Positions 36,567 to 46,168 of a stretch of DNA of 64,000 bases are shown in pieces; position 1 is the stretch's first letter; each line of letters begins with the position of its first letter. Origin of the DNA: Schizochytrium sp. TIO01 (taxonomy: Eukaryota > Protista > Bigyra: Labyrinthulomycetes); the NCBI GenBank assembly GCA_004764695.1, contig SMSO01000034.1, forward strand, positions 2,852,001 to 2,916,000. Reading direction: 5' to 3'. A model generated the notes under the pieces. It did not search any database. It saw nothing but the letters and a program-made list of their open reading frames with translations, and had not been told where the DNA came from. A program made the translations under genes and the position numbers.

Positions 36567-37481
36567 TTACATCTTACCCTTGGAGGGTTGACCGTAACGA
36601 GCCTGGGTGCGGAAGAGCAGACGCGGGTGGTTGCCATAACCTCCCATGGAGCGGTGGCAAACCTGTAGGTTGTCCCACATAAGGATATCTCCTTGCTCCC
36701 ACTGGTGCTCATAAGTGTATCCATTCTCACACATGTCAGCCCAGAGGTCCTCGTTGGGCTTCCAGTGCTCCTTGCGCTTCTGATCAAACAAGCCCTTGGG
36801 AGTGAATGGGCAGTACAGAGTCTCCTGGCCAGTAATAGGGTGAGGGTACACGCAGGGGAGTGTCACATCCGGAAGAAGCTCTTCTGGCTTTGCGTTCTTG
36901 AAGTCTGAGATCCATTTGCACGAGACAAGGCATGTGGAGTCGCGGAGACGCTGCTTCTCTTCGGCAGAGAACATGTCCGAGTGAAGTGCCATGGTTGTGT
37001 CCATGAATCCGGTGTTGCCACCGACAGGTGGAATGACCTTTGCGTGGAGCAAGTTCACAAGGCGATATCCAGGCATGCCCCAAAAGTTGCCATCGTGATG
37101 CCAGTACTCAGCAGCAGTGACGCGAGGAACAACACTGCCATCAACCTTGATGTTTCCAACACGAACAACCTCAGGGTGGCCAGGGTCGCGGTTATCAAAT
37201 GCAAAGCATGAAGGGAGAAGCGTGGGTTCTCCGAGACGAGCTGTGAGCTCCTTGAGTTCCGAAGGAGTGAGGTCTTGGCCCTTGACGCAGACAATACCGT
37301 GTTTCCAGAGTTTGTCTGCGACCTCTTTTTTGAAGCTGGCATCATCAAGCTCTAGAACGCTGCGTCCGTCAAGGTCAATCGCTGTGTATCTGTTCTTCAA
37401 GACGCCGTCCTTGGGTGTTGGGAACCTCATGGCCGGAGTCGGCATGTCATCTGCCTTGCTAGTCGCTGCGCTTGCAGACAT
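36567..37481 (-). CDS. TauD/TfdA-family 2OG-Fe(II) dioxygenase
   Basis: L..HGIV.V.GQDLT, WHHDG (HxD), PPVGGNTGF.D, HP.TG...LY, YEHQWEQGDILMWDN..V.HR, R.LFRT. Single exon. Confidence 0.93.
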   Translation of the reverse strand: MSASAATSKADDMPTPAMRFPTPKDGVLKNRYTAIDLDGRSVLELDDASFKKEVADKLWKHGIVCVKGQDLTPSELKELTARLGEPTLLPSCFAFDNRDPGHPEVVRVGNIKVDGSVVPRVTAAEYWHHDGNFWGMPGYRLVNLLHAKVIPPVGGNTGFMDTTMALHSDMFSAEEKQRLRDSTCLVSCKWISDFKNAKPEELLPDVTLPCVYPHPITGQETLYCPFTPKGLFDQKRKEHWKPNEDLWADMCENGYTYEHQWEQGDILMWDNLQVCHRSMGGYGNHPRLLFRTQARYGQPSKGKM

Positions 37482-38706
37482 TTTTGCAACTTTCCCCTGT
37501 GAATCTGCTATTGAGCTCTGCTACTGTTGTTGTTGTTGTTGCTGCAACTGCTGCTTCTGTTGCTTCTTGTCGAATCGACGACTTCGATTCTCGGAATTTG
37601 GGTTTGCCTTCCTTGACCTACTAGCGAAAGCAAAAGAGAAATAAAGAAACAGAGGAAGAATCTCCTCTCACTTTTCTTTTCAAAGAGAGAATGTAATGAC
37701 TTGGAGTGCCGCACTGTTACTGTTTCTCTTTAACTAAAACATTACCACAACACAACCTCGAAGTTGATATGTCCTCTCTCTTCTCCATCCTCATCGTTTT
37801 CTCGCTCTGCTGAAGCGCATTTCTTGCTAGTGTAAAGAGTAGCTAATTTACTAAGTCAATACTCTGTTGAGAACAATTCTCGCGAACAGAGCGAATGTTC
37901 CACCCTATTCCTCAATAACTCGTCTTTTATACTTATCGCTCCACGGGCTCTGAGGTTGAAGATAGAGGCGGTGCGGGCGGGACGGCTGCTGCTCTTGCCG
38001 CATCCAAGCGCCCGTCAGCAGGGGCAAGCAGGCCAAGCAAGCCACACCAAGGTTGACTCGGACTGCTCGGAGACGCATAAACTAAACTATCCCATAGTAC
38101 TCACTCCTCTCTTTCCTATACTCCACTTGCACCCGTATTCTCTACTTGCGCATACCGGTTTAACCCACTTACGCTCGCCCAAGCGAACAGGAGCCTCCCT
38201 TCGCTGTACGCTTTCCCACCGGACACCGCGTCATTAACAAACCCAATTCGAAATTGAATTACCTTTGTCTTGTAGAAAGCCACCGAAGGGGTGAAGGAGT
38301 TCGGCGCATGTCAGGGCGGAACACGCGTCAGGGGAGCCAATCGCGGCCTGTGGAGACACACCCCAAGTGTACCATTTCCCTGCGTTACCCTGTTGTGCAT
38401 CTCCGTATACAGTGAAGTAAAGTTGTATAGGTGGTTTACAGCTGCCGTATACTGCACTTGCAGGGCAGTGCAAGTGGAGAATCGAGGAAATGTCCTCCGC
38501 TGAGCTGCCCACTTCGCTATGTTTCATGATGAAGATTACCAATTTGGTAAACTTGCAGTGGAAGGAAGCATTTGTGAAGGATTGAAGTCTCGTGATGAAT
38601 AGCGCGAGCGTGACTATAAATATAAGTATGATTGCAGTGTCTGTGCTGAGTAGTGGTCACTTTCGAGGAGGAGGAGTGTCATACGCAGAGGGCCATGTGA
38701 ATAATG

Positions 38707-38750
38707 AGAAGAAGAAGAAGAAGAAGAAGAAGATGATGATGATGATGATG
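38707..38750. repeat. Compound (GAA)n(GAT)n microsatellite
   Basis: Seen directly in the sequence. Confidence 0.9.
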
Positions 38751-39275
38751 ACGTGTGATTCTCTTTCTGGTTCTGGACAAGGGCGACCTGGATGGGAAGG
38801 GGGGAACAAGGCTTAGCGAAACTGCCTTCTACACTGCAATGCACCCGTATCCTCCGCCGCACGTTGCCGCCGTATCCGCAAGAATCCTCCTCGAGGTAGG
38901 GTGCACGCAGCAGCCATACCTACTCGCGACGAGGCAGTAGGTGTTGCGGCACTGCGTCACCACGAGCGCCTTGGCGGCACAGCACAAAGGCCCCTGACCC
39001 TGTCTACGGAACCCGTTGCTGCTGTGCTGTACCTCTCTCGGGCGACCACCGAGAACGAACGATGGGGGTTGGCTGATTGATCGATTGATGGTACCCATGC
39101 GAGGCTGCATCGACGTGAGGCCTCTGCTGCCGCACTTCAGGGTTGGAGGATCGATCGCTCGCACGCGGGGCTTTGGCTCTCTCTGCTGCAGTCAGTGCCT
39201 GAGCATCTGGTGGGCTCTTGGACTCCAAAGATCGCGGTTCCTGCCGCGTCCTCTTCCTCGAGATTCCTACCGGAA

Positions 39276-41500
39276 ATGAAACGTCTCCGGCGCCTGCTCG
39301 GAGACAATGGCCCTGCCGCAGCGGCGACGACGGCGGAGGCGAGGCGCCTGCCTTCCCAGCCAGAGTCCGGCTCTCCGCAGCAGGCAGACGCTGCTGTAAG
39401 GAGGCTTCTTGTCGAGGTGGCCAATGCGCAGAGATCGCAAGAACGGGCATATTTCAAAAACATGCTGCTCGTTGAGCTAGCTCGTTGAGCTCGTTGAGCT
39501 CGTTGAACTCGCTGAAGTCCTCGAGGATGCCGAGGCACAGCAGGCCGCGAGCGAGGGTCAATACGAGGCCGGGCGAGGGCTGAAGTGGTCCTTGGCACGC
39601 CGCTGTCGCGCCGCCGTGAGTCTCTGGAGCGTCTCTCTTCTTGGCTTCTTGTTATGTTATCTTTCTGCCAAGTGAGAGGGAGAGAGAGCGCCCAGTCAGT
39701 CCTGCACTTTGCATGTTCCTTTCGTGAAGCAAGCAAGCAAGCTCTTTCCGATGGCTCCGTGACCAAACTCTGCGCTGGCCGACTCCAGGAGAGAGACGCC
39801 GCCTCCGCGGGCCCAGCTTCTCGCGAGCTGCTCTGGCGTCGCGAGCGCGTCGTGGTCTTCTGCAAAGATCATCCGCCCTCTCCGGTTTTGAATCTCTGGA
39901 GATAGATATTTCGGCAGCACATTCTTTCTGCCTATCATGGGTCACCATAAGGCCTGATTATGGAAAACTGTAGGAGCGAGCTTTTGAATTTCTTTTTATT
40001 TTTAAAATCTTTCTTCTTTCTTTCTTCGAAATTAAATAATAATAATAATAATAAAAATCATGTTTTGTTTTGTTTTGTTTTGAATTATTTTGAATTGGTT
40101 TTATGATTAAAAACTTAAGTAAAAAAATGAATTTGAACTCTCAAGTTAAGTTGTGTGAGTTTGTTTCTTTCCAATGGAAAGAAAGGACAGTTCAACAGCT
40201 TGGAGCTCTCGGCTGTGCACATGCACTACAACAGCTCGAAAGTTTGCCAAGTCTGTCGAGCGAAGTAAAACGGGCATGGTTCCCGACGAAGTTCCCTGGC
40301 ATCAAGTAGACCCGCTGCTCAGTCGCGTCGCAACATCTTCCGCCCATGCCCATCAAGCAGACTGTCGAGACGAAGGTGCAAAGGAGACCTCTCTGTGCAC
40401 CTCTAGAGAGAACCTAGCAAATCTGGCTTGACATGAACCTGAGACTCGGATCGAAGATCGTAAAAGCGGAAGGGAGCTTCTACTCCCTCGAGGCATGGAT
40501 GCAACACGCCCCGACTTCAGGTTTTAGAGGCAGCCAGTCAGATCTCTGGAGTTTAGAATGCTGGACATCCATTGATATCGTCGGGTTAGACGGCAAAAGC
40601 GCTTGCGGTTATGAATGCCAATGCACGGCCGAATCAGTAACGCACAAGTGAAAGAAACACAGGGGATCAATGTCGAAGAACGTGCATGGCTCGCTTTAGC
40701 ATGTGCAGGCGAAAGGGTGCCTAGGCAGGTGCTTACGGAGACCATGATGGTGTCGAAAGGCACCTTCAAGTTTGCGAGAGGGACCTGCGGCAATCGATCG
40801 AGGTAACGTTTTTGTAAGCATGTGGGACCGTTCCCGTGGAAGCTATGGGCGGAACATCGGCCTCGCCTGGGCGTGTGTGCAGTCTGCGGCATACTGCGAG
40901 GCAGGTTGCTGTGCAGAAATCCCGATGCATGTAATGTACACTGCGGATGAATGAGTAAGTTGCGATGCCTGAGGTCGAACCAAGATCGAACCAAAAGAAC
41001 ATGACATACTCATGAGCGGGCCCTCGAGCCTTGTGCAGACGGACCTGCATGGCATGGGTGGATGCTCTCCAATCTCGCCCCAGCCTGCAATGTCTTGGAA
41101 TTCACCATGCGGGTGATCTTCTTCGCGATTCCAGCTTTACCGAAGAGCGCATGGATGAGCTTGGCGCCATGCAAACTGTCGATAGTCCAAACCCAGCACC
41201 TCTCGAGCAGCTTGGTGGCGACCGGCTTCGATAATCACCACCAGCTTTTCCACTGGAACGAGCTCCAGAGCGCCAAATGCCAATACGGGTGAGGCTTTCC
41301 GGCATACGTGCAGCCGCTGTCGCCCCGGGGTCTCGACGGCATTCTCTACTCCGCGCTCTGTCAGGTGGCTGCCCAAGTGTAGATCCCGCCCACGAAGACG
41401 AGGTAAGTCAGCCCAAGCCAAGCCAAAGATAGAGCACCTCGAGAAGAACCTCGTGCGTGACTGCCATGAGCCTCTCGCCGCCGGAGAGACACTTTTCACG
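39276..41500 (+). pseudogene. Probable decayed gene(s): GC-rich coding-like fragments interrupted by stops and frameshifts
   Basis: Short plus-strand ORFs with protein-like text (MKRLRRLLGD...; ...PSPVLNLWR; ...LQSRPSLQCLGI...) broken by stops and by a 9-bp tandem repeat. Family not identified. Confidence 0.3.
39467..39515. repeat. 9-bp tandem repeat GCTCGTTGA (4 exact copies plus 1 degenerate)
   Basis: Seen directly; supplies the TGA ending the 39276 ORF. Confidence 0.85.
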
Positions 41501-41873
41501 AGCGGAGCAGAGCCAAGGCCAGCCCCGCCTTGGCCGGGCCGAGGCGGCTTCGCGGACCCGCCCGCGACGCCATCCAGGCCGGCAACGAAGAGCCTGGCGC
41601 CGAGGGCTCGAAGAAGGGCTCTTCGCCAACAGAGTTCTGCGTGGAATTCGTCCCATCCATCGCGGCTCAAATGTGATAATCTCTCTCTCTCTCTCTCTCC
41701 GAATCAAAGAAAATTCAAATTAGCCATGAAAAGAGAAACATGTTTTCCTTTTCAAATTTTCAAATTTTCAAAATTTACAACTCGAACAATAAGAACTTGA
41801 AAATCGAGTGAAAAACGATTTTTATTGATTTTTTAATTTTTGTTTTTTTAAATAAATTAAAAAGTAATACCTC

Positions 41874-41911
41874 TTGTTGTTGTTGTTGTTGTTGTTGCTG
41901 TTGTTGTTGTT
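41874..41911. repeat. (TTG)n microsatellite
   Basis: Seen directly in the sequence. Confidence 0.9.
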
Positions 41912-42696
41912 GAATTTAGCCTGAAAGCTTTGCCGGAACTGGAGAAGCGCAGACAAAGCTAATGCAATCGTGGATCCATATCGAAGAGGCAGCTTGGCCG
42001 TTTCAAAACCTCGTTACCAGAGGCGGCTTTGGGGCACTGCTGTCTTTATTCGCACACACACATCAAGGCGCCCGGGCGTGCATGCCGCGAGTTTTAGTCC
42101 CCTCTCACGAACACTGTTCCTTCCTACGTCGCGCAATAGAGAACCGGCGGCAGTGAGGCTGTGAGGGCGCTTCTCAAGACCGCGGGAATTGAAGAGAAAC
42201 CCCAGCAAAACCCACACAAATGCACCCCAGTGGGTTCAAGAGGGTTGAAGGGTTGATGCTCTCCTCGGCGCTCCACTATAAATCTTGTCCTCGGTACGCC
42301 CAAAGGGTGTCCGTCTAAGCAGGTGCCACGGGGTCGGTTTTCCTCCCGCAGCCTGCCTGCTGTGCGTCACTGCTCCTTTTCAGAGAGAACGACGGTACAG
42401 CGATGTATGTATAGAGACAGAGAGGGATGACGCAAGCGTAGGACGCAGCTAGCGCTGCAGTAGGAGTGTTCCCTGGAGTGCGGGAGGCGCTCTGGTCACG
42501 CACAATGGTCTGCTGCCGTTTTGCGATAGCGATATATGTATATATAGAGAGAGAGCAACTGAAGGACTTAATGAAAGCTCGAAGTGAGGGGGAGAACTCG
42601 AGAGAAGGCTCCTCTGAGAAAGCCTAAAATTGGTCGCCTGTGGGTTAAAAGCGCCGGTTTGGCGAAATGCAGTCGAAGCTTCGAAGGGCTTAAGTT

Positions 42697-42727
42697 CTTT
42701 TCCTTTCTTTCCTTTCTTTCTTTCTTT

Positions 42728-42775
<48 letters not shown>
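42697..42775. repeat. (CTTT)n microsatellite
   Basis: Seen directly in the sequence. Confidence 0.9.
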
Positions 42776-42920
42776 GGGTGCTTGGAAAAATGACTGAGAA
42801 GCTGAAAGCGCCGTCGTTTTCTAAGAAACTGGAGGCACAGAAGGCGAGAAGGAGAGAAGAGCAAGTGAAAGAGACCTGTGACCACGAACTATTATGAGGC
42901 GCGCGATGCAGCGCTGTGAG

Positions 42921-43043
42921 GTAGCGAGTTACCACTTTGCACTCTCTACGTCGTGCTTTGTGTTTTTAATTTGTTTTATCTTGGTTCTTCTTGTCTGTGT
43001 TTCTTTCTTTCTTTCTTTCTTTCTTACTTTTTTTTTTTTTCAG
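42921..43043 (+). other. Probable 5'-UTR intron of the guanine deaminase transcript
   Basis: GAG|GTAGCG donor, long pyrimidine/poly-T tract ending TTTTCAG| at 43043. Confidence 0.5.
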
Positions 43044-43175
43044 GAGTAGGCGGTAGGACTTTGAATAATTTTCAAGTTCTTCTTCTCTTTGAAGTTCTTT
43101 CTCCTTCCTGTGACCAATTTGATTAGTCCTCAGTATGCTACTGATAGATAGACAGATAGCTAGATAGAAAGATAA

Positions 43176-43183
<8 letters not shown>

Positions 43184-43219
<36 letters not shown>
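43184..43219. repeat. (AG)n microsatellite
   Basis: Seen directly in the sequence. Confidence 0.9.
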
Positions 43220-43221
<2 letters not shown>

Positions 43222-43389
43222 CTGTGGGGTCGATGAGGCGTAGTTGGAGATCAGTAGGAATGACTATTGATTTTGAAAGAAACTGAGCACAGCAGAGATT
43301 GGTCGAAAGCCTCAGCAGCAGAAACCAATCGCTGCTGAGCCCGTGTTTGGAAGCGCGAAAGCGTAGTTTTGGAGAATCCACGAGCCAAG

Positions 43390-44595
43390 ATGACCACGGA
43401 AGAGTTTGACGGCGAGGCGCTCGCGAGAGACTCCTTCATGCAGGCTGCGGCAGCTTCTGCGATGGCCGGCGTGGCGCTTAAGCAAGGCGGTCCCTTCGGT
43501 GCCTGCGTTGTGCGCAATGGCATCATCATCTCGTGTGCGCACAACACCGTGCTCAGTGACCGCGACCCGACTTGCCACGCCGAGATGAATGCAATTCGCG
43601 ACGCCTGCAGAGCACTTGACACGCACGACCTCAGTGACTGCGAACTCTTTACCACCTGTGAGCCGTGCCCTCAGTGCCTTGGCGCCATCCAGTGGAGCCG
43701 TCTCAAGAAGACCTACACCGGCGTCGACCGCTTCACCGCCGCCGAATTTGGCTTCGATGACAAGGTATTCTACGATGAAATTAGCGCACAATCAGGACAC
43801 TGGGCAGTCAAGCTTGGCCAGACCATGCCCAACGTGCAGCCCTCCATGCTCAATGTCTACTTTGGCGTCGAGATGGAGCGTGTCGGCAAGCTCCTCGTTG
43901 ACCTTGATCTCAACAAGACCTACCGCCGCCGTGTCGGACACAAGGAACTTGGCTTCCACGACTCTGGTGAGCGATTTGGCAAGGATGTCATTGGTATCAT
44001 GGCACGCGAGTCCGAATCCAATTCTAACTCTGGTGCAGAGCAGTCTGATGACGAATCATCCACAGATCTCTCAGCTGAGGAGAACCGCGCTCACGAGGGC
44101 CCCAATAAAGATGTCAGCAAGTATTTTGATGTCCTTGAGGAGGCCCTTCGCGAAGCAGTGCGCAACGGTAAGAACAAGGAACGTGAGGTTTTCGCCTCGT
44201 GCATTGTCAAGGACGATCAGATTATCTCAGTCGCTGTTAATGAGGTCTTAAGACGCCGGGACTGCACAGCTACCAGTGAGGTTCTGGCAATTCGCAAGGC
44301 TACTCGAAAGCTCAAGACACATGATCTTCACGGATGCCAAATGTATTCTACTATGGAGCCCTGCCTTATGTCGCTTGGCGCAGTACTCTGGAGTCGTATC
44401 GACAGCCTCTACTACGGCCTGAGCCAGCACGCCGCCGCACGCCATGGCTTTGAGGAGGGCCTCCTTCACTACCGTGAAGTTTTCACCCACCCTGACACCA
44501 TGAGGGAGGTTATCAACATGGAGACAGGTGTGGCCTCTGAGGCATGCAGCAACGTCTTCAAACGCTGGCAAAAGATCAATGGCATCATCTACTGA
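43390..44595 (+). CDS. Guanine deaminase of the cytidine-deaminase fold (GuaD type), with two tandem deaminase domains
   Basis: Domain 1: GGPFGA, HN.V....DPTCHAE, CEPCPQCLGAIQW, GFDD. Domain 2: F.SCIVK, N.VL...D.TATSE, EPCLMSLGAVLW, GFEE. C-terminal Tyr. First ATG at 43390. Confidence 0.88.
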   Translation: MTTEEFDGEALARDSFMQAAAASAMAGVALKQGGPFGACVVRNGIIISCAHNTVLSDRDPTCHAEMNAIRDACRALDTHDLSDCELFTTCEPCPQCLGAIQWSRLKKTYTGVDRFTAAEFGFDDKVFYDEISAQSGHWAVKLGQTMPNVQPSMLNVYFGVEMERVGKLLVDLDLNKTYRRRVGHKELGFHDSGERFGKDVIGIMARESESNSNSGAEQSDDESSTDLSAEENRAHEGPNKDVSKYFDVLEEALREAVRNGKNKEREVFASCIVKDDQIISVAVNEVLRRRDCTATSEVLAIRKATRKLKTHDLHGCQMYSTMEPCLMSLGAVLWSRIDSLYYGLSQHAAARHGFEEGLLHYREVFTHPDTMREVINMETGVASEACSNVFKRWQKINGIIY

Positions 44596-45796
44596 TGGGA
44601 AAAGAAGATGACTTATTGCCAGCAAGAAGATACCAACTTTTTTGGCCTTTAAGAAAAAGAGGTAGTGTAGGGCCTTCCTTTTAAGTTTTGTGTCTTTTCT
44701 GCAGATTGCTTGCGCAGTGTGTTCTCGCGCAACCATTTCTTTACATCCACTTCCTCTTTCAACATTTACTCACTTGTTACATATTAGTATAGTACAAACC
44801 ACCCCTTTATTGCAGAAGCTTCAGCCAACCGACTTTGTTTGGCTTAGTATTCCATTATAAGAGGGGTTATCCTTTGTCGTACAAGACATCGGGCAAGGGC
44901 GGCACAAGCCATGGAAACAACCCGCGGTTTTCGAATGAACCGAGTCCAAGATTCGCTCAACAGGTGGACACTTTTGACATTTACTTTCTCCCCAAATGAT
45001 ATATCCTTTCCAAAAGAACAAGAAAGCACACAAAAACAGACGTAGAGGTGCGTCATTAAAATCATTAGAAGAGGGAGAAGCAAATATCAATTATGTCACC
45101 CCTGTAGCGTGACTACACTTGGGCTTACAATGCCACACGATTTTTGATGTTGAATCCACGCTTACAACGGTAAGCAGGGCTTTCTTTAATTGAAAGACAT
45201 GTCAACAGTCGTAGCTATATATTGTAGTGTTAGGCTGCATCTTTAACCAAATTTACCACCGATCAGGGCGGCCATGTCAGCTTGTGTAACAACCCGCGAT
45301 GAATAACATTGAATATCCATCTTATCTTAACCCTTTTACTTTTTCTTCTCAGTTCTGTCTCGCATTCTGAAATATCTTTTATTGTAAACAAGACAGTAAT
45401 GATGACTTGTTTCACTAGGGTCAGTAGGCTGGTTTTCTCACTGTATCTAGCTTGTCTCACCTGGATATCAACCTTCTTTGAAAACGAAAAATTATACTGA
45501 GTAGATCTTGCTCTTTTGCATGTATACAGATAGGCCTATATATATATATTTACTTTATTTTTTATGAATCAAAATCAATCTATAGAGAAAATTGCAACTG
45601 CTGCTGGAGAACATGTGCTTTACTTGCTATGATGGACCTCTTCTGAAATCTTCCGCCCTTGCTATTTGCCATATCCCCTAAGACTTCAAGCTTACTGCAG
45701 CAACCTAAATCTTGTGAATAATATCACTCAGCTCACGTGCTGCTGATTAGCTAAGTCAACTTTTATGCAATGTCAAGTCTCAAATCGCACAGAGTT

Positions 45797-46168
45797 CTAT
45801 GATCCACGGTAAGTCATCTGGCCGTACGGGCTAATAAGAAGCGGAACGTGATAGTGTGCTGAGGGGTCTTCAATCTCAAAAACAATTTTGACATAAGGGT
45901 AAAAGCATTTGCGCCCTTGAGCTTTGAAGTATGCCGCTGTATCGAAGTGAATCTCGTATACGTGGCCTGCTTCAAGGGCAGAATCCTTGAGCAGCGGTGA
46001 GTTCAAGCGTCCATCGGAGTTGGTCACCTGGGTCGCTACCAGATCCCACTCAAAGCTCCCATCCTCTTTTTCCCCAATCTTTCGAGACAGCTTCAAACTC
46101 AGGCCAGAGGCAGGTTGTCCAGTCGAGGTGTCCAATATGTGAGTCGTGATAGGGTTCGGGTCCGCCAT
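45797..46168 (-). CDS. uraH: 5-hydroxyisourate hydrolase (transthyretin-like protein)
   Basis: ITTHILDTSTGQPA, TNSDGR, F.T..YF, FYPYV.I.F, HYHVPLLISPYG and the diagnostic C-terminal YRGS. ATG at 46168. Confidence 0.95.
   Translation of the reverse strand: MADPNPITTHILDTSTGQPASGLSLKLSRKIGEKEDGSFEWDLVATQVTNSDGRLNSPLLKDSALEAGHVYEIHFDTAAYFKAQGRKCFYPYVKIVFEIEDPSAHYHVPLLISPYGQMTYRGS

What the first reader, a model, noticed from the sequence alone, without database searches (positions are those of the whole stretch)
36567..46168. Candidate purine-catabolism gene cluster in a protist: TauD/XanA-like dioxygenase + guanine deaminase + HIU hydrolase
Seen: three consecutive intact genes are a TauD-family 2OG-Fe(II) dioxygenase (-), a GuaD-type guanine deaminase (+) and a YRGS-type HIU hydrolase (-). 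Known: guanine deaminase makes xanthine; fungal XanA is a TauD-family enzyme converting xanthine to urate without Moco; HIU hydrolase acts right after urate oxidation. Inference: these could be steps 1, 2 and 4 of guanine-to-allantoin catabolism, clustered in a stramenopile-like genome for purine nitrogen scavenging. I do not know of such a cluster in this lineage. The deaminase-HIUase pairing (1.2 kb apart) is the solid part; the dioxygenase's role is a guess from context.
Basis: partly seen in the sequence, partly recalled or inferred. Interest (0 to 1): 0.82.

Follow-up and report, generated by a model that had tools for sequence, protein, structure and literature searches.

The report
Conserved purine-breakdown gene cluster in thraustochytrids
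Three neighbouring genes in a marine protist belong to a gene cluster for breaking down purines that is conserved across related species, and its unassigned dioxygenase is the only candidate for the xanthine-to-urate step in a genome where the usual enzyme was not found.

Summary
The window holds three intact, intronless, transcribed genes. They are a TauD-family Fe(II)/2-oxoglutarate dioxygenase, a tandem GuaD/GSDA-type deaminase with one live and one dead zinc site, and an HIU hydrolase.

- **Linkage:** the same three genes are consecutive gene models in Hondaea fermentalgiana. In a more distant relative, on a metagenome contig, they sit in a tight five-gene cluster. The two extra genes are an HpxO-type FAD urate hydroxylase and a 1434-aa fusion of malate synthase, OHCU decarboxylase, a beta-lactamase-like domain and allantoicase. 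Flanking genes are not shared.
- **Own genome:** those two extra genes lie together on another contig. No match was found for xanthine dehydrogenase (two domain families) or uricase.
- **Pathway gap:** xanthine to urate has no other candidate enzyme (allantoinase is a second gap), and the dioxygenase is the only cluster gene without a step.
- **Targeting:** the protist dioxygenases and HpxO carry peroxisome-targeting-like tails.

Caveats:
- The dioxygenase belongs to a bacterial-type subfamily and is probably not fungal XanA kin.
- Its bacterial relatives sit in NRPS-like/P450 contexts, not purine ones.
- No activity has been tested.
- A direct comparison with XanA was not possible.

The parts
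36567..37481 (-). TauD-family Fe(II)/2-oxoglutarate dioxygenase, 304 aa. It is the candidate Moco-independent xanthine hydroxylase. It ends in GKM, a peroxisomal targeting signal (PTS1)-like tail.
   Evidence: PF02668, E 1.4e-33. Mapping onto E. coli TauD shows the Fe ligands H128/D130/H276, the 2OG binders T157/R287, and R291 are all conserved. It is 86% identical to Hondaea GBG25255.1. Orthologues are 58-69% identical and end in SKL, GKL or SRL.
37482..43389 (.). 5.9-kb spacer between the divergently oriented dioxygenase and deaminase genes. It is single-copy and no gene was detected in it.
   Evidence: The only full-length match in the genome is to itself. The spacer ORFs have no Pfam match above cut-off and there are no Rfam matches. 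The equivalent spacer in the relative's contig L014 is 386 bp.
43390..44595 (+). Tandem GuaD/GSDA-type guanine (or guanosine) deaminase, 401 aa. The N-terminal domain is catalytically intact. The C-terminal domain has lost its zinc ligands but supplies the chain-terminal Tyr.
   Evidence: Matches 1wkq at 1.2e-34 and 7dbf at 1.3e-30. HAE, PCxxC and GFDD are invariant in the N-terminal domain. In the C-terminal domain HAE has become T-S/A/G-E and the second Cys has become Ser, across 13 protist orthologues. The terminal Tyr is nearly invariant. The catalytic role of the C-terminal Tyr in AtGSDA is described in PMC9739398.
45797..46168 (-). 5-hydroxyisourate hydrolase, 123 aa, single-copy in the genome.
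   Evidence: TIGR02962, 128.5 bits against a cut-off of 87.45. PF00576, E 1.2e-36. C-terminal YRGS. It is the only Transthyretin-family hit in the genome. It is 75% identical to Hondaea GBG25257.1.

Best explanation
The three genes are one half of a purine-catabolism gene cluster conserved in labyrinthulomycetes.

Proposed pathway, step by step:
1. The tandem deaminase converts guanine (or guanosine) to xanthine (or xanthosine), probably in the cytosol.
2. The TauD-family enzyme most likely uses Fe(II), 2-oxoglutarate and O2 to hydroxylate xanthine at C8. This gives urate, succinate and CO2, and replaces the xanthine dehydrogenase that was not found.
3. An HpxO-type FAD monooxygenase, on contig C36 of this genome, converts urate to 5-hydroxyisourate. 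It replaces the uricase that was not found.
4. The HIU hydrolase makes OHCU.
5. A four-domain fusion protein on C36 decarboxylates OHCU to allantoin, cleaves allantoate with its allantoicase domain, and condenses the resulting glyoxylate into malate.

The PTS1-like tails on the dioxygenase and HpxO suggest that the oxidative steps take place in the peroxisome.

Shown: the gene identities, the conserved linkage, the failure to find XDH or uricase, and the presence of the downstream enzymes.
Inferred: the dioxygenase's substrate, the localisation, and co-regulation.
For: Gene identities.

Conserved linkage:
- Hondaea GBG25255/56/57 are consecutive gene models on one contig.
- Metagenome contig L014 carries fusion(-), HpxO(+), HIUase(-), TauD(-), deaminase(+) with 23-386-bp spacers.
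- Only these five genes are shared with the window and the C36 locus. The flanking genes differ.
- TauD P0002 and deaminase P0057 both list a longest contig of 170,950 bp.

Pathway gap:
- No PF02738 or PF01315, the xanthine dehydrogenase domains.
- No PF01014, uricase.
- An HpxO orthologue is present at C36, 2e-85 to 3rp6, with the R204/Y216 equivalents kept.
- OHCU decarboxylase and allantoicase are present in the fusion protein.
- The other four TauD paralogues look like carnitine-pathway hydroxylases, an At3g21360-like protein, and an actinobacterial-type protein.
- The only Rieske ring-hydroxylating oxygenase is GbcA/CntA-like.

The dioxygenase itself:
- Its cofactor residues are intact.
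- The thraustochytrid clade sits on a long stem branch, which is compatible with a change of function.
- Only the protist proteins have C-termini GKM, SKL, GKL or SRL, and HpxO ends in PRL.

Precedent: fungal XanA is a TauD-family xanthine hydroxylase (PMC5611559).
Against: - No biochemical or expression-response data exist.
- The dioxygenase is 32-46% identical to bacterial proteins. Nine of 25 such loci place it next to an NRPS-like A-T-TE protein, and seven of those also carry a P450. None places it beside HIUase, HpxO or allantoicase genes.
- Only 2 of the 25 bacterial genomes have an HIUase at all. Homology therefore gives no support for a purine substrate.
- It keeps the Arg (R291) that binds the anionic group of the substrate in TauD.
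- The G000 and Hondaea tail GKM is not a canonical PTS1.
- No shared upstream motif was found.
- In this genome the cluster is split across two contigs, and the dioxygenase lies 5.9 kb from the deaminase.
Confidence: 0.6

Rival explanations
1. The dioxygenase belongs to the purine cluster but acts at a different point. It might oxidise hypoxanthine, hydroxylate guanine, xanthosine or another purine or ureide, or serve as a back-up urate oxidase.
For: The linkage evidence is the same as for the main explanation. Hypoxanthine oxidation is also left without an enzyme, since no XDH was found.
Against: HpxO, with its urate-contact residues conserved, already covers urate to HIU. Xanthine to urate is the one step between the clustered enzymes that lacks an enzyme. 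The only known purine-directed TauD-family enzyme, XanA, acts on xanthine.
Confidence: 0.15
2. The dioxygenase has nothing to do with purines. It could be a sulfonate or other small-molecule hydroxylase, as its public annotation says, and stays next to the deaminase only through inherited gene order.
For: Hondaea annotates it as a sulfonate dioxygenase. The bacterial homologues are in secondary-metabolite-like contexts and are not linked to purine genes. R291 matches the sulfonate-binding Arg of TauD.
Against: It scores 57.5 bits against a cut-off of 313 for the taurine dioxygenase equivalog. Seven taurine-contact positions other than the conserved Arg all differ. Between G000 and L014 the flanking genes have all changed and the HIUase has moved to the other side, yet the dioxygenase stays beside the deaminase and inside the purine cluster. 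Proteins in these two genomes are only 47-66% identical. The pathway would otherwise have no enzyme for xanthine oxidation.
Confidence: 0.2
3. The adjacency of the three genes is a coincidence in one genome.
For: The genes have different orientations, there is a 5.9-kb spacer, and the neighbours are unrelated housekeeping genes.
Against: The same neighbours recur in Hondaea and in L014, while the flanks differ. The chance expectation is below 1e-3 per pair in a 64-Mb genome.
Confidence: 0.02

Closest known systems
Fungal XanA (Aspergillus nidulans xanthine/alpha-ketoglutarate dioxygenase)
   Same: It is a TauD-family Fe(II)/2OG enzyme that makes urate from xanthine without Moco. It occurs as an alternative to XDH, and in Phytophthora it reached stramenopiles by gene transfer from fungi (PMC5611559).
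   Different: XanA is reported to have no bacterial homologues. The window protein has many bacterial homologues at 32-46% identity, and none of the named proteins among the 54 hits is fungal or called XanA. From memory, the spacing between Fe ligands also differs: about 191 residues in XanA against 148 here. No direct alignment was possible. If the function is the same, the origin is probably independent.
Klebsiella hpx purine-utilisation genes (HpxO urate hydroxylase, HpxDE Rieske hypoxanthine/xanthine oxygenase)
   Same: Both use an FAD-dependent HpxO in place of uricase, use a non-Moco oxygenase for xanthine oxidation, and cluster these genes with deaminase and ureide genes (PMC4562309 and PMC7373994).
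   Different: The cluster here is eukaryotic, with PTS1-like tails. The xanthine step would be carried out by a TauD-type enzyme rather than a Rieske enzyme. HpxO had been reported only in a limited number of bacteria.
Saccharomyces DAL cluster
   Same: It is a eukaryotic gene cluster for purine-derived nitrogen catabolism (the allantoin pathway), assembled by rearrangement (PMC5611559).
   Different: It covers only the steps from allantoin downwards. It arose together with the loss of xanA, uricase and related genes. The labyrinthulomycete cluster spans guanine through to glyoxylate and malate.
B. subtilis GuaD and Arabidopsis GSDA
   Same: They share the CDA fold, the HAE/PCxxC zinc site, the GFDD Asp, and a chain-terminal Tyr that closes the active site.
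   Different: Those enzymes are homodimers. Here two domains are fused into one chain, and the second domain is catalytically dead but keeps the terminal Tyr.
Allantoin synthase (HIUase-OHCU decarboxylase fusion of plants and diatoms)
   Same: It fuses consecutive uricolytic steps into one polypeptide (PMC13751858).
   Different: Here the HIUase is a separate gene. OHCU decarboxylase is instead fused to malate synthase, a beta-lactamase-like domain and allantoicase.

Membership tests
TauD/TfdA Fe(II)/2-oxoglutarate dioxygenases (PF02668) | Pfam match above the gathering score | tested here: met
   117.4 bits against a cut-off of 27, covering profile positions 9-266 of 267.
TauD/TfdA Fe(II)/2-oxoglutarate dioxygenases (PF02668) | HxD...H facial triad plus the Thr and Arg that bind 2OG | tested here: met
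   H128, D130, H276, T157 and R287 align with E. coli TauD H99, D101, H255, T126 and R266. All are invariant in the 14 aligned sequences.
Taurine dioxygenase proper (NF007104 equivalog) | Score above the curated cut-off, and conserved taurine-contact residues | tested here: not met
   57.5 bits against a cut-off of 313. TauD residues H70, Y73, N95, V102, S158, F159 and F206 align with P, F, A, G, I, a gap and T. Only R270 is kept.
Fungal XanA xanthine dioxygenase | Orthology to A. nidulans XanA with its substrate-binding residues | not testable with these tools
   No tool returned a XanA sequence, and the two enzymology papers are not held. The indirect evidence is negative. XanA is said to lack bacterial homologues, whereas this protein has many. 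No named hit is a XanA.
Fungal XanA xanthine dioxygenase | Xanthine to urate activity dependent on Fe(II) and 2OG | not testable with these tools
   This needs an enzyme assay.
GuaD/GSDA-type CDA-fold guanine or guanosine deaminase | HAE and PCxxC zinc site, the Asp of GFDD, and a chain-terminal Tyr | tested here: met
   The N-terminal domain has H70-A-E72, C100, C103 and D130/D131, all invariant. Y408 is the last residue of the chain. The best PDB hits are 1wkq and 7dbf. Whether the substrate is guanine or guanosine cannot be decided from sequence.
5-hydroxyisourate hydrolase (TIGR02962) | Score above the cut-off and a C-terminal YRGS | tested here: met
   128.5 bits against a cut-off of 87.45. 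The protein ends ...MTYRGS.
HpxO FAD-dependent urate hydroxylase (NF033623), the cluster partner outside the window | Score above the cut-off | tested here: inconclusive
   The L014 protein scores 468 bits against a cut-off of 500, over the full length of the model. The next family scores 205 bits.
HpxO FAD-dependent urate hydroxylase (NF033623), the cluster partner outside the window | Equivalents of the urate-site residues Arg204 and Tyr216 | tested here: met
   The G000 protein matches 3rp6 at 2e-85, and the GEGKR and GRFYFF motifs align. The roles of these residues are recalled from Hicks et al. 2013.
Eukaryotic metabolic gene cluster | Three or more non-homologous genes of one pathway lying adjacent | tested here: met
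   Three genes lie in 9.6 kb here. Five genes lie in 8.6 kb in L014.
Eukaryotic metabolic gene cluster | Linkage conserved across species beyond general synteny | tested here: met
   The linkage holds in G000, Hondaea and the L014 organism. Flanking genes are not shared between G000 and L014.
Eukaryotic metabolic gene cluster | Co-regulation | not testable with these tools
   Only the presence of the proteins in transcriptome sets is known. No shared upstream motif was found.

The most novel reading that the evidence does not exclude
Labyrinthulomycetes may run a complete purine-degradation route that uses neither Moco nor uricase, is partly peroxisomal, and is encoded as a eukaryotic gene cluster. 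It would be built from unusual parts:
- a second, independently evolved TauD-type xanthine hydroxylase that is not XanA;
- a bacterial-type HpxO urate hydroxylase;
- a single-chain pseudo-dimeric guanine deaminase;
- a four-domain fusion enzyme whose beta-lactamase-like domain is a new kind of allantoinase.
Probability: 0.4. Interest if true: 0.85.

Novelty: new variant of a known kind. Interest (0 to 1): 0.74.

Why it matters
Conserved catabolic gene clusters are well documented in fungi and plants, and I found no report of one in protists. In the papers I could search I found no report of a purine cluster in labyrinthulomycetes.

If the dioxygenase hydroxylates xanthine, Moco-independent xanthine oxidation arose at least twice within the TauD family. 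HpxO-type urate hydroxylases would also no longer be confined to bacteria.

Public annotation hides the pathway. In Hondaea the genes are labelled sulfonate dioxygenase and tRNA adenosine deaminase.

Thraustochytrids are industrial DHA producers and marine decomposers, so their use of purine nitrogen has practical and ecological interest. Because the cluster points to one specific gene, the hypothesis can be tested directly.

Tried and rejected
- The 170,950-bp JGI contig that probably holds both TauD P0002 and deaminase P0057 could not be read. The only evidence for it is the matching contig length.
- **XanA comparison:** no tool returned a XanA sequence, and PMC2258140 and PMC2525507 are not held. 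No direct alignment was made.
- **ESM Atlas:** neighbours of the dioxygenase and of paralogue L007 were generic TauD clusters. None was named as a xanthine enzyme.
- **Bacterial context:** I expected purine genes next to the bacterial homologues and found an NRPS-like A-T-TE protein and a P450 instead. The CDA deaminase next to four of these loci is ambiguous between GuaD and TadA.
- **Phylogenetic profile:** only 2 of 25 bacterial genomes carrying a homologue have an HIUase.
- **Spacer as mobile element or hidden gene:** rejected.
- **Shared upstream k-mers:** among the five genes in G000 and L014, only low-complexity 7-mers were shared.
- **HpxDE-type Rieske oxygenase as the missing xanthine oxidase:** the genome's one ring-hydroxylating alpha subunit is GbcA/CntA-like. 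This makes it unlikely but does not exclude it.
- **Not run:** the large representative-protein search and structure prediction. Neither would reveal the substrate.
Full report
**What is in the window**

ORF listing and family scans confirm three intact, intronless genes.
- 36567-37481(-) encodes a 304-aa TauD-family dioxygenase (PF02668, E 1.4e-33).
- 43369-44595(+) encodes two CDA-fold deaminase domains in tandem (PF00383, E 1.2e-40). The probable ATG is at 43390, giving 401 aa, the length of the database entry P0055.
- 45797-46168(-) encodes a 123-aa 5-hydroxyisourate hydrolase. It scores 128.5 bits on TIGR02962 against a cut-off of 87.45 and ends YRGS.

The rest of the window carries unrelated housekeeping genes. 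These include a phospholipase B, a Mid1-like protein, ankyrin proteins, a kinesin, symplekin and a kinase.

The 5.9-kb spacer between the dioxygenase and the deaminase is single-copy and has no Pfam match above cut-off and no Rfam match. Spacers of this length also occur at the C36 locus of this genome.

The organism is a thraustochytrid close to Hondaea fermentalgiana. Protein identities to Hondaea are 86%, 87% and 75% for the three genes. The exact proteins are recorded in MMETSP/EukProt transcriptome sets, so the genes are expressed.

**The deaminase**

The N-terminal domain matches B. subtilis guanine deaminase (1wkq, 1.2e-34) and Arabidopsis guanosine deaminase (7dbf, 1.3e-30) almost equally well.

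I aligned 13 orthologues from labyrinthulomycetes, dinoflagellates and a chromerid.
- In the N-terminal domain HAE, PCxxC and GFDD are invariant.
- In the C-terminal domain HAE has become T-S/A/G-E and the second zinc Cys has become Ser.
- The last residue of the chain is a nearly invariant Tyr.

In AtGSDA the chain-terminal Tyr185 closes the active site by contacting N7 of the purine (PMC9739398). The protein therefore reads as a single-chain pseudo-dimer with one live site.

Sequence cannot decide between guanine and guanosine as substrate. Either way the product leads to xanthine.

**The dioxygenase**

Mapping onto E. coli TauD (sequence fetched, alignment A3) gave the following.
- Conserved: the Fe ligands (H128, D130, H276), the 2OG binders (T157, R287), and the Arg equivalent to TauD R270 (R291).
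- Not conserved: seven taurine-contact positions.

The taurine dioxygenase equivalog scores only 57.5 bits against a cut-off of 313.

Its closest relatives fall into two groups.
- Four thraustochytrid-type proteins at 58-69% identity.
- A large bacterial group and one Tetrahymena protein at about 40-45% identity.

In a maximum-likelihood tree the thraustochytrid proteins form a fully supported clade on a long stem of 1.16 substitutions per site. They sit next to a bacterial clade.

Only the protist proteins carry a short C-terminal extension. It ends GKM in G000 and Hondaea, SKL in P0002, GKL in Thraustochytrium sp. LLF1b, and SRL in L014. These resemble PTS1 signals, and two are canonical.

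**Linkage in relatives**

- **Metagenome contig L014.** A scan with the deaminase alignment recovered the 15.9-kb contig Ga0105053_10006604. Its deaminase is 66% identical to the window's. The contig holds five adjacent genes:
  - a 1434-aa fusion of malate synthase, OHCU decarboxylase, a beta-lactamase-like domain and allantoicase (-);
  - an HpxO-like FAD monooxygenase (+), scoring 468 bits on NF033623 over the full model, with the next family at 205 bits;
  - an HIUase (-);
  - the TauD orthologue (-);
  - the tandem deaminase (+).
- **Hondaea fermentalgiana.** Cluster look-ups showed that the three genes are GBG25255.1, GBG25256.1 and GBG25257.1. These are consecutive gene models on one 1.1-Mb contig. 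They are annotated as sulfonate dioxygenase, tRNA-specific adenosine deaminase and HIU hydrolase.
- **JGI contig.** TauD P0002 and deaminase P0057 both report a longest contig of 170,950 bp.

A tblastn of all eight L014 ORFs found only the five purine genes in the window and the C36 locus. The L014 flanking genes, an ion channel and two unknown ORFs, have no counterpart there.

Gene order has been rearranged. The HIUase lies on the other side of the deaminase, and the cluster is split across two contigs in G000. Even so, the dioxygenase stays beside the deaminase.

**Pathway inventory in the window's own genome (64 Mb, 37 contigs)**

| Component | Result |
|---|---|
| Uricase domain (PF01014) | no match |
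| Xanthine dehydrogenase domains (PF02738, PF01315) | no match |
| Moco synthesis and sulfite-oxidase-type Moco enzymes | present |
| OHCU decarboxylase | present only inside a 1584-aa fusion ORF on contig C36, same four-domain order as in L014 |
| HpxO orthologue | present 4.7 kb from that fusion ORF |
| DAL1-type and PuuE-type allantoinase | no convincing match |

Because Moco synthesis is present, the missing XDH is not part of a general loss of Moco.

The HpxO orthologue is 64-66% identical to the L014 protein. It matches K. pneumoniae HpxO at 2e-85, keeps the Arg204 and Tyr216 equivalents, and ends in PRL.

Between the deaminase and the HIUase, every step except xanthine to urate has an enzyme. 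The dioxygenase is the only cluster member without a step.

Other candidates for the missing step look unlikely.
- Two of the four other TauD paralogues carry gamma-butyrobetaine-hydroxylase-type N-terminal domains.
- One is an At3g21360-like protein fused to an aldo-keto reductase.
- One resembles actinobacterial enzymes.
- The only Rieske ring-hydroxylating oxygenase is closest to the glycine-betaine and carnitine monooxygenases.

**Evidence against a purine role**

Homology gives no support.
- Of 25 bacterial loci encoding relatives, nine place the gene directly after an NRPS-like A-T-TE protein. Seven of these also have a P450.
- None of the 25 has HIUase, HpxO or allantoicase nearby.
- Only 2 of the 25 genomes have an HIUase anywhere.
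- A CDA-fold deaminase next to four of these loci is ambiguous between GuaD and TadA.

A purine function would therefore be an innovation of the protist clade. The long stem branch fits this but does not prove it. No shared upstream motif was found among the cluster genes.

**Relation to known systems**

- **XanA.** Fungal XanA is the precedent for a TauD-family xanthine hydroxylase. Scazzocchio (PMC5611559) describes it as fungal-specific and without bacterial homologues. Phytophthora acquired it from fungi at about 70% identity. The window protein has abundant bacterial homologues and no fungal or XanA-named hit, so it is probably not XanA kin. I could not obtain a XanA sequence to test this directly.
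- **HpxO.** HpxO was reported only from a limited number of bacteria, with eukaryotes using Uox (PMC4562309).
- **Bacterial non-Moco xanthine oxidation.** This is known from the Rieske-type HpxDE system (PMC7373994).
- **Prior reports.** I found no paper describing purine catabolism genes in thraustochytrids.

**Verdict**

- A conserved purine-catabolism cluster is well supported, at about 0.9.
- Assigning the dioxygenase to xanthine hydroxylation is the best available explanation, at about 0.6 for a purine-pathway role centred on xanthine. It rests on context alone.
- The finding is a new variant of known kinds: a eukaryotic metabolic gene cluster and Moco-independent xanthine oxidation. It has direct experimental tests.

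The scan had two first-reader notes on the same window, s1-843738 and s1-843755, covering the deaminase and the dioxygenase separately. Neither had been followed up.

Noticed in passing
G000:C36:3688082-3692836(-) = L002:4083-8837(-); orthologue at L014:2589-6893(-): A single 1584-aa ORF fuses malate synthase, OHCU decarboxylase, a beta-lactamase/transpeptidase-like domain and allantoicase. The beta-lactamase-like domain keeps its SxxK motif (FEIASLSKT) in both orthologues. No convincing DAL1-type or PuuE-type allantoinase match was found in the genome. The beta-lactamase-like domain sits exactly where an allantoinase would act, so it is a candidate third type of allantoinase.
   Followed up: partly
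G000:C36:3697578-3698792(+) = L124:5079-6296; orthologue at L014:6954-8150(+): An HpxO-type FAD urate hydroxylase in a eukaryote. It matches K. pneumoniae HpxO at 2e-85, keeps the Arg204 and Tyr216 equivalents, and ends in PRL, a PTS1-like tail. No uricase match was found in this genome. A 2015 survey reported HpxO only in some bacteria.
   Followed up: partly
L099-L104, L106, L108, L119 (bacterial MAG loci), e.g. L102:1668-7155: A conserved cassette of unknown product in Verrucomicrobiota, Gemmatimonadota and Pseudomonadota MAGs. It consists of a cytochrome P450, an NRPS-like A-T-TE protein of about 950 aa and a TauD-family dioxygenase. In four loci a CDA-fold deaminase lies on the opposite strand.
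   Followed up: partly
G000:C6:1016239-1018362(-) = L004:427-2550(-): One 707-aa ORF joins an At3g21360-type TauD-family domain (1y0z, 1.3e-87) to a xylose/aldose-reductase-type aldo-keto reductase (5zci, 8e-84). I did not check whether this is a true fusion.
   Followed up: no
Hondaea fermentalgiana GBG25255.1 and GBG25256.1 (P0297, P0056): The public annotations look misleading. The dioxygenase gene model carries a 106-aa N-terminal extension that is absent from the window protein and from the other thraustochytrid orthologues, which are 270-305 aa long, and it is named sulfonate dioxygenase. The tandem guanine-type deaminase is named tRNA-specific adenosine deaminase.
   Followed up: partly
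L014:8174-8653(-): The HIUase ORF in the metagenome relative has an N-terminal extension containing RLSKLSCQM, which is close to a PTS2 consensus. The window HIUase has no such extension.
   Followed up: no
window:5553-6638(+): A 361-aa protein with a 2OG-Fe(II) oxygenase domain of the prolyl-hydroxylase type (PF13640). It is not a TauD-family protein and shows no apparent link to the cluster.
   Followed up: no
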